Of a DNA stretch of 64,000 nucleotides, positions 2,507 through 23,380 are shown piece by piece; the first letter of the stretch is position 1; every line of letters starts with the position of its first letter. Location: sequence record OQ427096.1; one strand, 5' to 3'. Below the pieces are notes generated by a model. The model saw only the letters and a program-made list of their open reading frames with translations. It was not told where the DNA came from and searched no databases. A program made the position numbers and the translations under genes.

Positions 2507-3591
2507 GTCAGTTTGATATCAGTACAGAAACCAACTACCTTGACCGCAAGATGTTCCTGGATGGTACTGTTACCATGCAGCGCTTCGACAAGGTGAAGTA
2601 TCCGAAGATCCAGCAGTATGAGAAAGTCCAGCGTGGATTCTTCTGGGTGCCTGAGGAAATTGACGTCACCAAGGATCGTCAGGACATGAAGGCTGCATCT
2701 CCGGCAGGTCGACATGCCTTCACCAGCAACTTGCTGCGACAGACGACGCTTGACAGTGAACAAGGACGCGCACCGCTGCAGATTTTCGGACCGGTTGTGT
2801 CTCTACCTGAAATGGAAGCCCTCCTGTCTATCTGGGGCTTCTTTGAGACAAACCTGCACTCCAACAGCTACAGCCATATCATCCGCGGTGTCTATCCGAA
2901 CCCAGGCGAAATCTTTGATCAGGTTCATCAGAACCAGGAGATCATTGATATGGCAGCAAGCATTGGTCGCTACTACGGACGCCTTGATGACTTGAACGTT
3001 CGTAAGGCGCGCGGAGAGAATGTAGACATCATCGAGCACAAGAAGGCGATCTGGATGGCTCTGCACGCATCCTACGCGCTGGAAGCAATTCGCTTCATGG
3101 TGAGCTTCGCCACATCCTTCGCAATGATGGAGAACAAACTCTTCATCGGCAACGGTACGATCATCGGAATGATCCTGCAGGACGAACTTCTGCATAAGGA
3201 ATGGACTGCCTACATCCTGAATCAGGTGTGCAAGGAAGATCCTGACTTCGCAATGATCCGCGATGAAATGGCGGAAGAAGTCTATGCGATGTATGAAGAG
3301 GTCATCCAGGAAGAAAAGAACTGGGCTGTGTATCTCTTCAAGGAAGGTCCAATCATTGGCCTCAACGTGAAGATCCTCCACTACTTCGTAGACTGGACTG
3401 CTAAGGAATGTCTCGAGGCGGTTGGCATCAAGTACCGTGGTGAGGCTCCTAAGTCGCATCCGATTCCGTGGTTCTTGAAGCATGTGAAGCAGGAGACGAA
3501 GCAGACTGCTCTGCAGGAACTGGAATCCACCGACTATGTGATTGGATCACTGACGAGCACTATTGACTATGGCGACCTGCCCGTACTGTAA
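2503..3591 (+). CDS. nrdB: Ribonucleoside-diphosphate reductase beta subunit
   Basis: FFWVPEE, di-iron ligands (ETNLH, LEAIRF, DELLH), C-terminal Tyr. Confidence 0.97.
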   Translation: MSQFDISTETNYLDRKMFLDGTVTMQRFDKVKYPKIQQYEKVQRGFFWVPEEIDVTKDRQDMKAASPAGRHAFTSNLLRQTTLDSEQGRAPLQIFGPVVSLPEMEALLSIWGFFETNLHSNSYSHIIRGVYPNPGEIFDQVHQNQEIIDMAASIGRYYGRLDDLNVRKARGENVDIIEHKKAIWMALHASYALEAIRFMVSFATSFAMMENKLFIGNGTIIGMILQDELLHKEWTAYILNQVCKEDPDFAMIRDEMAEEVYAMYEEVIQEEKNWAVYLFKEGPIIGLNVKILHYFVDWTAKECLEAVGIKYRGEAPKSHPIPWFLKHVKQETKQTALQELESTDYVIGSLTSTIDYGDLPVL

Positions 3592-3958
3592 GAAGGAAGC
3601 AACACTCGAGACGGGCGAAACGATCTACCCACACCGACCTGACCTCTACACGCTCTACTTCTGGGCGTGTATGAAGTGTAAGGCGTGGGTAGGTTGTCAT
3701 GGAACGTCTCAGGTACCAATGGGAAGACTGGCCAATGCCGCTTCCCGTAAGCTAAAGTCCAAGGCACATAGCTTCTTCGATCCCATCTGGAAAACTGGCT
3801 ACATGACACGCACACGCGCGTATGCTTGGCTTCAAGGAATGACAGGGCTCTCAGCAGATGACTGTCACATGGGAATGATGGATGATGAAATGCTGAGGAA
3901 GGTGGCAAAGATGTGCAGACAATTTTTACTTGAAACAGGAATTAGAAACGATGTATGA
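3569..3958 (+). CDS. Zinc-finger protein (DUF3268-like)
   Basis: CPYC..CMKC..VGCH..PMGRLAN..KAHSFFDPIW pattern. Confidence 0.8.
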   Translation: MATCPYCKKEATLETGETIYPHRPDLYTLYFWACMKCKAWVGCHGTSQVPMGRLANAASRKLKSKAHSFFDPIWKTGYMTRTRAYAWLQGMTGLSADDCHMGMMDDEMLRKVAKMCRQFLLETGIRNDV

Positions 3959-6784: not shown

Positions 6785-7080
6785 TTCGTGATTACACCAA
6801 CTTCCCGCACCGCGCAGGCGATGTCTATCGACTGGGTGAGTCGAACCTGTACTACATCCTGTCCATTGTCGAAGGCGACTCGGTCAATGACGACTGGCTC
6901 AAGTATGCCCTGATCAGCCTCGACGGCAACCGTTGGTGCGAGCCTATCGCACTTGACCGTTCTAATGAACGCCCTGCTGACGGTCTGACGGAAGAAGAGT
7001 TCACCACCCTTGTCAGCGCAGAGGACCGAGAAGCTTTCGTCAAGGCTTCGGGCAGGCTGGTTTTCGCCTCGCTCCACTGA
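6781..7080 (+). CDS. Hypothetical protein
   Basis: ATGA overlap with upstream stop. Confidence 0.7.
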   Translation: MIRDYTNFPHRAGDVYRLGESNLYYILSIVEGDSVNDDWLKYALISLDGNRWCEPIALDRSNERPADGLTEEEFTTLVSAEDREAFVKASGRLVFASLH

Positions 7081-7129
7081 CAGTCCAATTCGGACCAATG
7101 CTGGCCAATACTAGCATGTGAAGGTCAGC

Positions 7130-7192: not shown

Positions 7193-7264
7193 ACGTAAGT
7201 GTCTGATTCTATTGGGGTTCTGGTTGTGAAGGGGTACCACGTAAGTGTCTGATTCTATTGGGGT
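7193..7264 (+). repeat. 26-bp direct repeat x2 containing the GTAAGTGTCTGATTC motif
   Basis: ACGTAAGTGTCTGATTCTATTGGGGT at 7193-7218 and 7239-7264. Confidence 0.95.
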
Positions 7265-7328
7265 CGTCACACATGAAGGTAGCGTTTAAAGCTCGTGACG
7301 GGCTGACAACGAAACTTTAACGAGTCTC

Positions 7329-7356
7329 TTCACAAGACCCGGAGTTCTGATACAGT
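7329..7356 (+). promoter_or_regulatory. Sigma70-type promoter
   Basis: TTCACA-N16-TACAGT with TG extension. Confidence 0.5.
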
Positions 7357-12307: not shown

Positions 12308-12401
12308 CCCGTTGTATCCCCAGACGCTACGAACGTCTACAAAGGTAACTGGAGTGGTGTCAAAAGCACTGATGCAGGTTCGAATCCTGTCGACGGGTCC
12401 A
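12308..12401 (+). tRNA. Non-canonical tRNA-Arg(ACG)-like RNA, rearranged D/anticodon region
   Basis: Acceptor CCCGTTG/CGACGGG+T+CCA and T-arm GGTTCGAATCC intact; AGACG-CTACGAA-CGTCT hairpin follows the acceptor directly. Confidence 0.7.
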
Positions 12402-12855: not shown

Positions 12856-13063
12856 ACATTAAAAGGTTGCGCAGAAGTGTGCTTCATTTAGACTGTGAAC
12901 ACAGTCAGGCAAGTCGATCAAAAGACGCGCCGACAAGCCCGAAGCGAGTTCTTCGGCTAAGAAGGAAAGACATCGTTTCCTACTTGTAACGACAAGTCCT
13001 TAGAGGATGAAGTCTCCGTTAGTCGGACGCCTGAGAGTGGCGAAAAGGATTCTTCGGTATTTC

Positions 13064-13884: not shown

Positions 13885-14795
13885 TGAAGCAACGTCCAGA
13901 CCACTGAAGAGTCGCCGGGACGATAAACAAAGGCACGAAACGTCGAGAGGCACAAAACATTAGCCTCGTGAGACGTCTGGTCTAGCAACTCAATTGTCGA
14001 AAGGCGATTGTTTAGGAATACGGTACAGTGATGTGCCTAATGGATTAAACGCCCACAAGCGGTCCGCCAGAGATGGTTCCTCTAGAACAAGTCGACATAG
14101 TGCAGCCGAAAGGTTGGCGTCTAGTATCCCTAGGCGATATGTGGAGGCTCAGTGAGACACGAGATTCAGGTCCAATGCCGAATGGTGAGGATTTGATCGT
14201 TTAGCGACGGTAGTGTTTCGGCTTAGCGGCAACTGACTCCAAGGACATTGAATCGGCAGGTACGTAGTTCAAGCCTTAGCGGGTAAGGGCGAGTATCAGG
14301 TCAGACGGACTAATGTTCGTACTGTATCACTCGGACGTAGGCTTAGCGGCTGAAACGAGAGGAGGTCGGGTAAGAAGCTGTCGCCCAAAAGGCTATGGAC
14401 TTACGAACCTGCTCGACCTTAGTGGGCTTTCAACTTTGACGGTTAATCAAAACTACGAAAAACGCAAAGTCAGGTTCGGTCGTAAGTGAAAGTGGCTTAA
14501 TCGTTGACACGAAAGTGAATCAACGCAATTTGAGGCTCGCAAGGCTGATGATTGTCTATCAGGAAGTGCACCTAAGAGGAAGCCCCTCTGAATGGCTCGC
14601 AAGGTCAAGGGAAACGGGAAGGTAGAGTAGCTTACGATGACAGAGGAAACGCCACCTCTTTAAACTAGGCAGCCATGACGGTTAACAATGATGCATCGAA
14701 AGATGGTTGTTGTGGAAAAGTTGGGAAGGGCTCCGCAAGAGCTGATAATCCAAACGAATGAATCGTCTCGTCAGACTGTATTCTCAGGTCGACAC
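13885..14795 (+). ncRNA. Large structured ncRNA, GOLLD-like
   Basis: ~0.9 kb without a convincing ORF inside a tRNA array; long helix 14399-14411/14471-14487; repeated CTTAGCGG and GGCTCGCAAGG hairpins; 3' GTATTCTCAG. Confidence 0.7.
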
Positions 14796-14936: not shown

Positions 14937-14944
14937 AGTTTTAT

Positions 14945-15148
14945 ACGCGTGTAGCTCAGTGGCGACGATAAGTTCAAAGACGGTAGGCATACTGTCACGC
15001 AGAGCGAGTCGAGGATTGGCGATACGACTGTGACGATACGAAGGTGGAGCTCGAGATCCTAGCTCCGACAATAACGGTACGGTCAACATTCGAGAGCGCC
15101 GGGTAGATAACCCGGAGGTCAGTGGTTCGATTCCATTTTCGCGTACCA
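14945..15148 (+). tRNA. tRNA-Ile(GAT)-like RNA with ~125-nt insertion in the D-loop
   Basis: D-stem GCTC (14954-57)/GAGC (15094-97) separated by 136 nt; anticodon arm CCGGG-TAGATAA-CCCGG; T-arm; ACCA. Confidence 0.72.
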
Positions 15149-15176
15149 TATAAGTAGAGTAGTACAAAAGTTTTAT

Positions 15177-15512: not shown

Positions 15513-15598
15513 TCTGGACGCGCCTAATGGGGAGGCACCGGGCTGTTAACCCGGCGATAGAAATATCCGACACGGTTCGATTCCGTGGTCCAGAGCCA
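15513..15598 (+). tRNA. tRNA-Asn(GTT) with long variable arm
   Basis: Loop CT-GTT-AA; GATA-GAAA-TATC extra arm; G73. Confidence 0.85.
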
Positions 15599-15770: not shown

Positions 15771-15850
15771 CGGGATAGGGACTGCTAGGTGTGGTCGCCG
15801 GACTGTCAATCCGGAGAGTCAGACGGATTCGAATTCCGTTATCCCGACCA
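15771..15850 (+). tRNA. tRNA-Asp(GTC), atypical (C1-G72, A73)
   Basis: Loop CT-GTC-AA; Pro-like acceptor end. Confidence 0.82.
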
Positions 15851-15857
15851 AGTCAGT

Positions 15858-15930
15858 GGCGTCCTCTTCGGAGATAGTGAAGTGAGGTAAAGTACTCAAT
15901 GCTCACGGAACGAATAATCAGACGCCTCCA
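15858..15930 (+). ncRNA. CCA-terminated mini-RNA 1
   Basis: GGCGTC/GACGCC stem + T + CCA; internal hairpins; no T-loop. Confidence 0.5.
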
Positions 15931-15943
15931 AAATTGAGAATGA

Positions 15944-16017
15944 TGCGCGGTCGTATAACGGCAGTATACTGGGCTCATAACCCGGAGATGGAGGTTCGAT
16001 TCCTCCCTGCGCTACCA
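15944..16017 (+). tRNA. Initiator tRNA-fMet(CAT)
   Basis: 1:72 mismatch, three G-C pairs in anticodon stem. Confidence 0.9.
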
Positions 16018-16042
16018 AATGGTCAGGCTCATGACCTAACTC

Positions 16043-16100
16043 TGTGAGTATGATAAGCTTTCATGAGGCTGTCGGGACTTAACTGTTCAACTCACAACCA
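16043..16100 (+). ncRNA. CCA-terminated mini-RNA 2
   Basis: Perfect 7-bp TGTGAGT/ACTCACA + A + CCA; 58 nt. Confidence 0.55.
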
Positions 16101-16106
16101 ATCAAC

Positions 16107-16182
16107 GGGTCCGAAGCTCAAATGGCAGAGCAACTGGTTCTTACCCAGTAGGAAGTCGGTTCGATCCCGACCGGACCCACCA
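16107..16182 (+). tRNA. tRNA-Lys(CTT)
   Basis: Cloverleaf, CCA. Confidence 0.93.
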
Positions 16183-16188
16183 AACTAT

Positions 16189-16228
16189 GCGCTCGAGCAG
16201 CCGAAAGGAAGTAGCCGAGGGCGCACCA
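16189..16228 (+). ncRNA. CCA-terminated mini-RNA 3 (40-nt minihelix)
   Basis: GCGCTC/GGGCGC + A + CCA, capped by CC-GAAA-GG. Confidence 0.5.
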
Positions 16229-16234
16229 AACAAT

Positions 16235-16323
16235 GGACTCGTTCCCGTAGTTGGTCGAACGGAGCGGACTCTTAATCCGACGGCGAAAGCCCATCGCAGG
16301 TTCGAATCCTGCCGGGTCCACCA
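16235..16323 (+). tRNA. tRNA-Lys(CTT) with long variable arm
   Basis: Loop CT-CTT-AA; GGC-GAAA-GCC extra arm; Tyr/Leu-like D-arm. Confidence 0.85.
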
Positions 16324-19002: not shown

Positions 19003-19295
19003 GGGACTGTGCCGGATAGCTCCCGGACATTATGATGTGAGTAGGTTAGCCTGACTAGGGTGTTTGGTGCATCAGGCACCATCTGAAAGACTAATCCAAA
19101 GTTGATTGATGCAGGTCCCGCCAGATGCAAAAGTAAGACTAGCCGTTCAAGTCGGTAAGCACATGGTGTGCACCATGCCGCGTTAGGTGTGGAGGAGGCG
19201 TTCGAATCGTCGGTGGTTGCCAGGCCCCTATAGACACTGCTTGCAAGAGGGATTTAAAGTAACCAAATGAGGTCGCTCCTCGCGGAACAGTTCCC
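19003..19295 (+). ncRNA. Putative ~290-nt ncRNA containing a tRNA-like domain (19137-19222)
   Basis: Ends GGGACTGT/ACAGTTCCC pair; internal D-loop, fully paired CATGGT-GTGC-ACCATG arm, TTCGAAT loop, GCCA. Confidence 0.45.
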
Positions 19296-19310: not shown

Positions 19311-19422
19311 GAAGGTTGTAGCTCAAAGGTAGAGCGCCGGGTGTCGGACCCGGGTCAAAGAGTATGAAGTTCGCGCGAACTGTCTGCTCAGGTGCAGGAG
19401 TCGAAGCCTGCCAGCCTTCCCA
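19311..19422 (+). tRNA. Non-canonical tRNA (TCG) with ~40-nt variable arm
   Basis: Acceptor AAGGTTG/CAGCCTT, G-1:C73, loop TG-TCG-GA, 8-nt T-loop, CCA. Confidence 0.65.
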
Positions 19423-20526: not shown

Positions 20527-20618
20527 GGAGCGTAACTCAGCCAGGTGGCTGACGCTGTTTGCTAAACAGTTGGGACCCTATGAACGGGTCTGGGGATCGA
20601 GACCTCTGCGCTCCGCCA
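20527..20618 (+). tRNA. tRNA-Ser(GCT)
   Basis: Type II, G73. Confidence 0.93.
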
Positions 20619-22224: not shown

Positions 22225-22313
22225 GGATTGTTAACCAACCGGGGAGTTGGCACCGCTTCGAAAGCGGTAGGTGCCCGAAAGGGCATGGGGATCGAGACCT
22301 CAGCAATCCGCCA
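22225..22313 (+). tRNA. tRNA-Ser(CGA)
   Basis: Type II, G73. Confidence 0.93.
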
Positions 22314-22836: not shown

Positions 22837-22923
22837 GGACAGTAATCTGGCTTGGTAGTCAGCACCGCTTGGAAAGCGGTTGGTACCGAAAGGTATGGGA
22901 TTCGATTTCTCTGCTGTCCGCCA
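22837..22923 (+). tRNA. tRNA-Ser(GGA)
   Basis: Type II, G73. Confidence 0.93.
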
Positions 22924-23343: not shown

Positions 23344-23380
23344 AAAAGCCAGGGCTTTAATCGGTCCTGGCTTTTTCTTT
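23344..23380 (+). terminator. Terminator closing the tRNA island
   Basis: AAAAGCCAGGGC..GTCCTGGCTTTTT. Confidence 0.85.

What the first reader, a model, noticed from the sequence alone, without database searches (positions are those of the whole stretch)
15858..16228. Three CCA-terminated mini-RNAs (73, 58 and 40 nt) interleaved with real tRNAs
Seen: each spacer forms a 6-7-bp acceptor stem with a discriminator and encoded CCA (GGCGTC/GACGCC-TCCA; TGTGAGT/ACTCACA-ACCA; GCGCTC/GGGCGC-ACCA) but has no T-loop or cloverleaf, so tRNA finders would miss them. Three in 370 nt, placed like the tRNA genes, is unlikely to be chance. Inference: minihelices processed with the operon that act as aminoacyl donors, synthetase/EF-Tu/RelA decoys, or bait for tRNA-targeting toxins. 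Candidate undescribed RNA class.
Basis: partly seen in the sequence, partly recalled or inferred. Interest (0 to 1): 0.8.

Follow-up and report, generated by a model that had tools for sequence, protein, structure and literature searches.

The report
tRNA-end mimics filling phage tRNA slots
Three short non-tRNA inserts in the tRNA operon of Xanthomonas phage X1 really do end like tRNAs (closing stem, one base, CCA) far more often than chance allows, but the closest relatives lack them, so they look like dispensable passengers built to be cut out by the tRNA-processing enzymes, not a proven new functional RNA class.

Summary
The window is Xanthomonas phage X1. At 15858-15930, 16043-16100 and 16189-16228, three consecutive inter-tRNA fillers are each closed by a 6-7 bp helix followed by N-CCA. 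They sit 6-25 nt after the previous tRNA and 6-13 nt before the next. None has a T-arm, and no tRNA finder or Rfam model detects them. Chance gives about 0.2-3% per spacer and about 1e-6 to 1e-8 jointly.

They are not conserved. The closest relatives (a Logan contig, phage BUDD and others) have 5-13 nt tRNA-tRNA junctions at slots B and C. Slot A is empty or holds a different 38-nt filler. The indels are whole units bounded by ACCA. One relative carries a Seg-type homing endonuclease gene in slot A.

A fourth CCA-ended unit (19003-19123) is conserved in the clade, with a compensatory change in its closing stem and a replaced interior. An unrelated Klebsiella/Erwinia phage unit shows the same architecture with covariation.

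Best reading: these are tRNA-slot passenger units whose ends mimic tRNA ends. RNase P and 3' trimming would then excise them cleanly, as with T4 RNA C and D. The decoy, bait and charging roles are untested and unsupported here. Interest is moderate.

The parts
15858..15930 (+). Mini 1: a 73-nt unit with a 6-bp closing helix GGCGUC/GACGCC, discriminator U and CCA. The interior has a C(UUCG)G hairpin and alternative GUGA/UCAC helices. Leader ...AGUCAGU, with U at -1.
   Evidence: (closing pairs P>=0.98). Absent in BUDD (13-nt junction) and L012/L014 (5 nt). L010 has a different 38-nt filler at this slot.
16021..16036 (+). Small hairpin GGUCA-GGCUCA-UGACC between tRNA-Met and mini 2. It belongs to the same X1-specific 83-nt insertion.
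   Evidence: fold of 16018-16106. The whole insertion is absent in L010 and BUDD.
16043..16100 (+). Mini 2: a 58-nt unit with a 7-bp closing helix UGUGAGU/ACUCACA, discriminator A and CCA. The interior has two short hairpins. One can be drawn as a 4-bp stem with a 7-nt loop UUCAUGA.
   Evidence: closing pairs P 0.8-1.0. ARAGORN -mt does not call it. Absent in L010, BUDD and L012 (6-7 nt junctions).
16189..16228 (+). Mini 3: a 40-nt rod-like hairpin with closing helix GCGCUC/GGGCGC (one G-U), discriminator A, CCA and an internal GAAA tetraloop. A shifted register is isoenergetic.
   Evidence: Absent in L010 (5-nt junction). The slot holds an unrelated 72-nt stem-closed element in BUDD and L009.
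15771..15850 (+). tRNA-Asp(GUC) number 2, the upstream neighbour of slot A.
15944..16017 (+). tRNA-Met(CAU), between slots A and B.
16107..16182 (+). tRNA-Lys(CUU), between slots B and C. It is identical in L010 and L009, where it is not flanked by the minis.
16235..16323 (+). The 89-nt tRNA-Lys(CUU) with a long variable arm, the downstream neighbour of slot C.
   Evidence: (90% identical copy in XacN1).
19003..19123 (+). A fourth unit of the same kind, not in the finding: 121 nt, closing helix GGGACU/GGUCCC, discriminator G, CCA. It starts 5 nt after tRNA-Gln. It is conserved in BUDD and L010 with a compensatory A-U to G-C change in the closing helix, while the central ~60 nt is replaced in L010.
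   Evidence: No Rfam hit.

Best explanation
The three units are strain-specific, non-coding cassettes that occupy tRNA-gene slots in the X1 tRNA operon. Each is a self-contained stem-loop. Its closing helix plus N-CCA copies the features that the host tRNA-maturation machinery reads.

Predicted pathway (inferred, not shown):
- They are co-transcribed with the flanking tRNAs.
- RNase P cuts at their 5' end, using the acceptor-like helix and pairing of the 3' NCCA with the P15 loop. That cut also leaves the upstream tRNA with only a 6-25 nt trailer.
- RNase P cleavage of the next tRNA, followed by 3' exonucleolytic trimming, stops at their CCA.
- This releases discrete RNAs of 73, 58 and 40 nt with tRNA-like ends.

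Selection seems to act on the ends, for clean excision that does not disturb maturation of the neighbours. The interior appears free to vary.

The units come and go by whole-unit gain or loss at the CCA/junction repeats. These arrays are recombination hot spots and can host Seg-type homing endonuclease genes. The units are dispensable for the phage lineage. Whether they began as tRNA genes whose body was replaced, or were captured from elsewhere, is open.
For: Shown:
- Three of three consecutive fillers have helix + NCCA in tRNA-like register and spacing, about 1e-6 by chance.
- They are not tRNAs. They have no significant similarity to 158 tRNAs of the clade.
- The indels against L010 and BUDD are exact units bounded by ACCA...ACCA.
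- A Seg-type GIY-YIG gene occupies slot A in relative L015.
- Unit 19003-19123 keeps its closing helix (one compensatory pair) and GCCA across X1, BUDD and L010, while its interior is replaced. That is the pattern expected if the ends are what matters.
- Across 36 spacers of 30-160 nt in 12 phage loci, 7 have a positioned helix + NCCA against 0.17 expected. One is a T-arm-less unit in Klebsiella and Erwinia phages, with 3 compensatory pairs, 2 of them in the closing helix.

From the literature:
- E. coli RNase P cleaves acceptor/T-stem hairpin model substrates, and the RCCA-P15 pairing is essential in vivo (PMC11143913).
- Small non-tRNA substrates are cleaved in an RCCA-dependent way (PMC12710915 abstract).
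- T4 makes RNA C and RNA D from its tRNA region (PMC3014915; L006).
Against: - No expression or end-mapping data exist.
- Other fillers in relatives lack NCCA, yet those arrays presumably work: BUDD 692-773 and 1854-1933, L015 1586-1655, L010 4016-4060. A tRNA-like end is therefore not obligatory for a filler.
- The BUDD-type slot C element has CCA in BUDD but CCT in L009.
- Predicted interiors are interrupted helices, not a 12-bp coaxial stack, and overall fold z-scores are weak.
- Mini 1 has a pyrimidine discriminator. So do 6 of the array's own tRNAs.
- Three independent insertions within 370 nt in one lineage is an odd coincidence that this account does not explain.
Confidence: 0.5

Rival explanations
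1. Trans-acting tRNA-end decoys or baits. After excision, the CCA-ended minihelices would titrate or distract factors that read tRNA 3' ends or acceptor stems. Candidates are host defence enzymes that modify or cut tRNA 3' ends, aminoacyl-tRNA synthetases, EF-Tu, RelA, or the CCA-adding enzyme. The minihelices might also be charged.
For: - The helix + NCCA architecture is non-random.
- The units cluster around tRNA-Lys, Met and Asp genes, in an array of paired canonical/odd isoacceptors.
- A conserved unit of similar design exists in the clade and in unrelated phages.
- From my own knowledge, not checked here: mini 1's G1-C72, G2-C71, C3-G70 plus U73 resembles a tRNA-Cys acceptor end, and U73 minihelices can be charged by CysRS in vitro.
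Against: - The units are absent from the closest relatives that infect the same host genus.
- No homologues exist elsewhere.
- No covariation can be shown.
- Mini 3's tRNA-like register is not the favoured fold.
- No acceptor-stem identity set was matched by any test here.
Confidence: 0.15
2. Freshly crippled tRNA genes. Each unit would be a former tRNA gene whose body was deleted or replaced in one step, for example by imprecise repair after a homing-endonuclease cut. The two acceptor strands and the CCA survive only because too little time has passed for decay. On this view the units have no function and no selection acts on them.
For: - They occupy tRNA-gene slots, spacing and junction motifs.
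- The arrays contain other odd or degenerate tRNA-like genes.
- A homing endonuclease gene sits in slot A of a relative.
- L010's 38-nt slot A filler shares GGCG...GCC..AAATTGA ends with mini 1 and has CCT instead of CCA, which could be a decayed version.
Against: - No residual D-loop or T-loop sequence remains next to the acceptor strands.
- There is no significant similarity to any of 158 clade tRNAs.
- The tRNA covariance model gives nothing at E<=10.
- MAFFT does not align mini 1 with the L010 filler.
- Relatives show no tRNA at slots B or C that could be the parent.
Confidence: 0.2
3. A DNA-level role. The inserts would be junction-disrupting spacers that protect the tRNA-tRNA junctions from Seg-type homing endonucleases or from recombination. 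Their RNA ends would be tRNA-like only so that the insert is tolerated.
For: - A Seg-type GIY-YIG gene is inserted exactly at slot A in L015.
- segB sits in the T4 tRNA cluster.
- The fillers are strain-specific and confined to junctions.
Against: This is entirely inferential. The endonuclease target site is unknown, and slots B and C have no endonuclease gene in any relative seen.
Confidence: 0.08
4. Extremely reduced decoding tRNAs (armless, like some mitochondrial tRNAs). For example, mini 2 would be a D-armless tRNA with anticodon loop UUCAUGA (CAU).
For: - Mini 2 can be drawn with a 7-bp acceptor, a 4-bp stem with a 7-nt loop carrying U33 and R37, and a 4-bp 3' hairpin.
- The clade conserves a D-armless tRNA-like gene (12308-12401).
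Against: - ARAGORN in mitochondrial mode calls none of the three.
- Minis 1 and 3 have no anticodon-like loop.
- There is no conservation.
- A bacterial ribosome and EF-Tu would not be expected to use them.
Confidence: 0.03
5. Chance hairpins in junk spacers.
For: Fold z-scores are weak. A closing stem alone is not rare (P 0.02-0.3).
Against: The joint probability of stem + N + CCA in all three spacers is about 5e-7 to 2e-8. The survey found 7 observed against 0.17 expected.
Confidence: 0.02

Closest known systems
Bacteriophage T4 RNA C (species 1) and RNA D (species 2), small RNAs of the T4 tRNA region
   Same: They are non-tRNA small RNAs encoded on the same strand inside a phage tRNA cluster, directly abutting tRNA genes. 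rnaD is followed by an encoded ...GCGCACCA end. Their biological role is unknown (PMC3014915). A Seg homing endonuclease gene lies in the same cluster.
   Different: They are 119-139 nt, against 40-73 nt here. rnaC carries a canonical T-arm (CCGGGTTCGAATCCCGG), which the X1 minis lack. The annotated rnaD is not closed by its two ends. There is no significant sequence similarity.
Acceptor/T-stem minihelix and hairpin model substrates of bacterial RNase P
   Same: A helix closed by the 5' and 3' ends, followed by a single-stranded NCCA. This is sufficient for correct cleavage by E. coli RNase P RNA with or without protein (PMC11143913). Mini 3 (40 nt, rod-like, GAAA loop) is close in size to a 35-nt minihelix.
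   Different: Those are laboratory constructs derived from real tRNAs, with a 12-bp coaxial stack and a T-loop. The X1 units are natural, have interrupted interiors and have no T-loop.
tRNA genes and tRNA pseudogenes of phage arrays
   Same: Slot, strand, spacing, -1/+1 nucleotides, discriminator + CCA, and a 6-7 bp acceptor-like helix.
   Different: There is no D-arm, anticodon arm or T-arm. Nothing is detected by the Rfam tRNA model at E<=10 or by ARAGORN in any mode.
Unnamed CCA-ended units found here: X1/BUDD/L010 unit (window 19003-19123) and the Klebsiella KP2025 / Erwinia Hena1 unit
   Same: They occupy a tRNA slot, have a closing helix + NCCA and no T-loop, and are missed by tRNA finders and Rfam.
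   Different: Those are conserved, with compensatory changes in the closing helix, and are longer (92-121 nt). The three minis are singletons.

Membership tests
tRNA (Rfam RF00005) | Acceptor helix with discriminator and 3' CCA | tested here: met
   6, 7 and 6 bp helices followed by TCCA, ACCA and ACCA. For mini 3 this register competes with a shifted one.
tRNA (Rfam RF00005) | T-arm with T-psi-C loop, D-arm and anticodon arm (cloverleaf) scoring with the covariance model | tested here: not met
   No RF00005 hit in the spacers at E<=1 over 12.5 kb, or at E<=10 over 396 nt. ARAGORN standard and pseudogene modes are negative.
Armless / D-replacement or T-replacement tRNAs (mitochondrial type) | Detected by ARAGORN/ARWEN mitochondrial models: acceptor + anticodon arm + one replacement loop | tested here: not met
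   aragorn -mt and -mtmam on 15851-16234 call only the two canonical tRNAs.
T4-type small stable RNAs of a phage tRNA operon (RNA C / RNA D) | Non-tRNA unit encoded inside a phage tRNA cluster, on the same strand, abutting tRNA genes | tested here: met
T4-type small stable RNAs of a phage tRNA operon (RNA C / RNA D) | Sequence or structure homology to rnaC or rnaD | tested here: not met
   Local alignment scores fall within the shuffle distribution (p 0.07-0.77).
T4-type small stable RNAs of a phage tRNA operon (RNA C / RNA D) | Accumulates as a discrete, stable, processed RNA during infection | not testable with these tools
   No RNA data are available for X1.
RNase P hairpin / minihelix substrates | Helix closed by the 5' and 3' ends with a single-stranded 3' RCCA | tested here: met
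   ACCA for minis 2 and 3. Mini 1 has UCCA, a pyrimidine discriminator also used by 6 tRNAs of this array.
RNase P hairpin / minihelix substrates | About 12 bp of coaxially stacked helix below the cleavage site | tested here: inconclusive
   Predicted interiors are short helices separated by internal loops. Mini 3 gives about 10 pairs in a rod. Thermodynamic prediction only.
RNase P hairpin / minihelix substrates | Cleaved by RNase P at position +1 | not testable with these tools
   Needs an in vitro or in vivo assay.

The most novel reading that the evidence does not exclude
Phage tRNA arrays would carry a widespread but unannotated category of CCA-terminated acceptor-stem mimics that lack a T-arm: the X1 minis, X1 unit 19003-19123 and the KP2025/Hena1 unit. 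These would be released by RNase P and act in trans as sponges or baits for enzymes that read tRNA 3' ends, such as host anti-phage enzymes acting on the CCA end, synthetases or the CCA-adding enzyme. Their rapid turnover would reflect an arms race rather than neutrality.
Probability: 0.12. Interest if true: 0.8.

Novelty: new variant of a known kind. Interest (0 to 1): 0.45.

Why it matters
If the units are excised as predicted, phage tRNA operons make more small RNAs than annotation shows. tRNA finders and Rfam miss all of these.

The pattern of constrained tRNA-like ends with a free interior would be a simple natural rule for inserting foreign sequence into a tRNA operon without harming tRNA maturation. 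It also offers a handle on the long-unexplained T4 RNA C and RNA D.

If instead the units act in trans on tRNA-end-reading enzymes, they would be a new kind of phage counter-measure.

For X1 itself, a candidate biocontrol phage, the units appear dispensable and raise no concern.

Tried and rejected
- Rfam at relaxed thresholds on the region, and on relatives' fillers: nothing.
- ARAGORN in pseudogene and mitochondrial modes: nothing.
- blastn of the three spacers against 50,697 phage genomes: only X1 itself.
- Exact-pattern scans of IMG/VR with a mini 1 22-mer, the tRNA-Met 3' end and the tRNA-Lys number 2 anticodon arm: no hits.
- The single metagenome scan, anchored on the tRNA-Met 3' end: one unrelated AT-rich contig.
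- The search for related loci with the downstream Zn-ribbon protein in IMG/VR: one distant locus without the array.
- Promoter and terminator scan: none inside the units.
- Coding potential: only spurious ORFs cross them.
- Parent-tRNA search by local alignment against 158 clade tRNAs: not significant.
- Homology to T4 rnaC and rnaD: not significant.
- Antisense targets within the 64-kb window: none beyond chance.
- Alignment of mini 1 with the L010 slot A filler: no convincing homology.
- Covariation analysis of the three minis: impossible, because no homologues exist.
- Duplicated tRNA 3' ends (integration scars): rejected. The 3' strands of the units differ from those of the upstream tRNAs beyond ACCA.

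Full report
**Source and context.** The window is Xanthomonas phage X1 (OQ427096.1; window position = record position minus 124000). X1 is a 200-kb lytic phage of X. campestris pv. campestris 8004 (PMC13384950). Between 12052 and 23337 the + strand carries a tRNA operon region.
- ARAGORN tRNAs, and 36 of them have an encoded CCA.
- The region also holds a GOLLD RNA (14361-14790, 179 bits) and small ORFs.
- A strong terminator lies at 23344-23375.
- Ordinary tRNA-tRNA gaps are 4-11 nt.

**The observation.** The three fillers between tRNA-Asp number 2, tRNA-Met, tRNA-Lys and tRNA-Lys number 2 are 93, 89 and 52 nt long. Each contains a unit closed by a helix that is followed by one base and CCA:
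- 15858-15930: GGCGUC/GACGCC-U-CCA
- 16043-16100: UGUGAGU/ACUCACA-A-CCA
- 16189-16228: GCGCUC/GGGCGC-A-CCA

Further features:
- The -1/+1 nucleotides are U/G, C/U and U/G. The array's tRNAs prefer U at -1 (26 of 37) and G at +1 (26 of 37).
- The closing pairs are predicted with P>=0.8 for minis 1 and 2, even with 40-90 nt of flanking sequence. For mini 3 the tRNA-like register (-13.3 kcal/mol) competes with a shifted one (-14.0).
- Mini 1 contains a C(UUCG)G hairpin and mini 3 a GAAA tetraloop (sequence).
- None has a T-loop on a T-stem.
- Rfam finds nothing at E<=10. ARAGORN finds nothing in any mode.
- No promoter or terminator consensus lies inside them, and only spurious ORFs cross them.

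**Is it chance?**
- Dinucleotide shuffles of each spacer give stem (>=6 bp, at most one G-U) + N + CCA in 1.7%, 1.6% and 0.2% of trials. With tRNA-like placement the rates are 0.3%, 0.5% and 0.15%.
- Equal-length windows from the rest of the phage give 3%, 2.6% and 0.4%.
- The joint probability is about 5e-7 to 2e-8.
- A closing stem alone is not rare, and overall fold energies are unremarkable. The signal lies in the combination of helix, register, CCA and placement.

**Relatives.** I found relatives through the phage collection and through exact-protein look-ups of the flanking small ORFs:
- BUDD (L002, about 87-91% identity)
- a 20.7-kb Logan contig closest to X1 (L010)
- short contigs L009, L011, L012-L014 and L015

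Slot by slot:
- **Slot A (Asp number 2 to Met):** X1 has mini 1. L010 has a different 38-nt filler (GGCGC...GUGCC, then CCU). BUDD has 13 nt and L012/L014 have 5 nt. L015 has a Seg-type GIY-YIG homing endonuclease gene here (PF19835 29.4 bits, PF01541 25.3 bits, both above cut-off).
- **Slot B (Met to Lys):** only X1 is filled. L010 and BUDD have 6 nt.
- **Slot C (Lys to Lys number 2):** X1 has mini 3 and L010 has 5 nt. BUDD and L009 share an unrelated 72-nt element closed by CUCAAUC/GGUUGAG. It is followed by CCA in BUDD but CCU in L009, where a G-to-A change turns a U-G pair into U-A.

Against L010 the X1 insertions are exact units that begin after the previous CCA and end with their own ACCA. 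The spacers have no homologue in 50,697 phage genomes. The one IMG/VR scan that probed the units themselves, a mini 1 22-mer, found nothing. The other IMG/VR scans and the single JGI metagenome scan used flanking-tRNA anchors and found no X1-like array. Covariation therefore cannot be tested for the three minis.

**Is there a wider category?** Two findings say that CCA-ended non-tRNA units in tRNA slots are real elsewhere.
- X1 has a fourth unit at 19003-19123 (121 nt, GGGACU/GGUCCC-G-CCA, starting 5 nt after tRNA-Gln).
  - It is conserved in BUDD and L010.
  - L010 has GGGGCU/GGCCUC, a compensatory A-U to G-C change plus a G-C to G-U change, and keeps GCCA.
  - The central ~60 nt is replaced in L010.
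- In a survey of 36 spacers of 30-160 nt from 12 phage loci, 7 had a positioned helix + NCCA against 0.17 expected.
  - Three are the X1 minis.
  - Three in Stenotrophomonas phage DLP_6 are odd tRNAs with T-arms that ARAGORN missed.
  - One is a T-arm-less 117-nt unit in Klebsiella phage KP2025. It has homologues in Erwinia phages Hena1 and SNUABM01/55.
  - That unit shows three compensatory pairs, two of them in the closing helix, and keeps ACCA in 4 of 5 sequences. It has no Rfam family.

**Mechanism.**
- Established knowledge: bacterial RNase P recognises the acceptor helix and pairs its P15 GGU with the 3' RCCA. It cleaves acceptor/T-stem hairpin models correctly (PMC11143913), and it cleaves small non-tRNA substrates in an RCCA-dependent way (PMC12710915 abstract).
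- From my own knowledge, not checked here: in E. coli some polycistronic tRNA transcripts are separated by RNase P itself, and 3' exonucleolytic trimming halts at the CCA next to the helix.
- Inference: each mini is cut at +1 by RNase P. That cut also frees the upstream tRNA with a short trailer. The mini is then trimmed to its CCA after RNase P cuts the next tRNA, yielding 73, 58 and 40 nt RNAs.
- The conserved-ends, replaced-interior pattern of unit 19003-19123 fits selection on excision signals rather than on a specific interior.
- The whole-unit indels, and the endonuclease gene in slot A of L015 (as with segB in the T4 cluster), fit cassette turnover at junction repeats.
- I give this 'processing-competent passenger' reading a confidence of 0.5.

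**Rivals.**
- **Trans-acting decoys or baits (0.15).** The architecture allows this and nothing excludes it. But there is no conservation, no matched identity set and no data.
- **Freshly crippled tRNA genes (0.2).** The slot grammar fits, but no residual tRNA sequence is detectable and no parent tRNA is seen in relatives.
- **DNA-level anti-homing spacers (0.08).** Suggested only by the L015 endonuclease gene.
- **Armless decoding tRNAs (0.03).** Mini 2 can be drawn with a UUCAUGA loop, but ARAGORN -mt rejects it.
- **Chance (0.02).**

**Comparison with the known.** The closest precedent is T4 RNA C and RNA D, small RNAs from the T4 tRNA region with unknown roles (PMC3014915).
- rnaD is followed by an encoded ...GCGCACCA end, and rnaC has a canonical T-arm.
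- There is no sequence similarity to the minis.
- The minis behave like natural versions of RNase P minihelix substrates.
- They fail the membership test for tRNA: the cloverleaf and T-arm criteria are not met.
- I therefore rate them a new variant of a known kind (non-tRNA RNAs of phage tRNA operons), not categorically new.

**Verdict.** The processing inference is reasonable but unproven. The functional proposals have no support, and the units are dispensable singletons. Interest is moderate (0.45). The more promising targets for follow-up are the conserved units (19003-19123 and the KP2025/Hena1 unit), where covariation already supports a constrained tRNA-like end.

Noticed in passing
window 14361-14790 (+); also L015 439-878: A GOLLD RNA (RF02032, 179 bits, E 2e-49) lies inside the tRNA array. 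A copy is present in a metagenomic relative (146 bits). GOLLD is known to sit next to tRNA genes in phages and prophages (PMC6582537).
   Followed up: partly
window 19003-19123 (+); L002 ~7210-7332; L010 ~6962-7083: A fourth CCA-terminated non-tRNA unit (121 nt) directly after tRNA-Gln. It is conserved in the clade with a compensatory change in its closing helix, while its central ~60 nt is replaced in L010.
   Followed up: partly
L018 7477-7593 (Klebsiella phage KP2025); L021 349-440 (Erwinia phage Hena1); L023, L024, L022: A conserved 92-117 nt, T-arm-less, ACCA-terminated structured RNA between tRNA genes of Klebsiella and Erwinia phages. It has three compensatory pairs, two of them in the closing helix, and no Rfam family. 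FKP3 has ACTA instead of ACCA.
   Followed up: partly
window 12308-12401 (+); L002 1042-1135; L004 7319-7411: A conserved ~94-nt tRNA-like gene missed by ARAGORN. It has a 7-bp acceptor, TCCA, a canonical T-arm and a stem-loop with loop CUACGAA (anticodon ACG). A 7-nt linker replaces the D-arm, and the variable region is long. The acceptor changes compensatorily between X1/BUDD and DLP_6.
   Followed up: partly
window ~14944-15150 (+); L002 ~3645-3850; L010 ~3111-3314; L011 ~176-375: A tRNA-like gene interrupted by a ~130-nt insertion in the D-loop region. The ends are GCGTGTAGCTCAGTGG ... GAGAGCGCCGGGTAGATAACCCGGAGGTCAGTGGTTCGATTCCATTTTCGCGTACCA. It is conserved in relatives, with a compensatory GGG/CCC to GGA/TCC change in the anticodon-like stem. 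No intron family was detected by Rfam.
   Followed up: no
window 20527-20618, 22225-22313, 22837-22923 (+); 19312-19419: Three Ser-type (long variable arm) tRNA-like genes with anticodon loops GCU, CGA and GGA and an unusual GGGGATCGAGACC-type T-arm. ARAGORN misses all three. Separately, Rfam calls a 108-nt tRNA with an insertion at 19312-19419 (31.7 bits).
   Followed up: no
window 16235-16323, 15513-15598 and the array generally: Isoacceptors come in pairs, one canonical and one odd or long: Lys 76/89 nt, Asn 76/86, Asp 75/80, Tyr 86/91, Glu 75/78. The 89-nt tRNA-Lys(CUU) has a class-II-like long variable arm. It is about 90% identical to a gene in jumbo phage XacN1 and also matches a Mesorhizobium phage and a 634-kb uncultured phage.
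   Followed up: partly
L015 1843-2139 (ENA ERZ22666087 contig): A Seg-type GIY-YIG homing endonuclease gene is inserted immediately after tRNA-Asp number 2, the same slot that holds mini 1 in X1. This parallels segB in the T4 tRNA cluster.
   Followed up: yes
window ~12860-13063 (+); L002 ~1495-1697; L010 ~240-442: A ~200-nt non-coding segment upstream of tRNA-Lys(UUU) with two UUCG-loop hairpins. It is conserved in BUDD and L010. It may be another structured RNA. No Rfam hit.
   Followed up: no
L005 5730-5840 (Xanthomonas phage XacN1): Another interrupted tRNA-like gene, with an insertion around the anticodon region, next to the shared long tRNA-Lys.
   Followed up: no
window 16220-16228 versus T4 rnaD 3' end (L006 ~3053-3061, minus strand): Mini 3 and T4 RNA D share the 9-nt 3' end GGCGCACCA. 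The whole-sequence similarity is not significant (p 0.07), so this is probably coincidence.
   Followed up: yes
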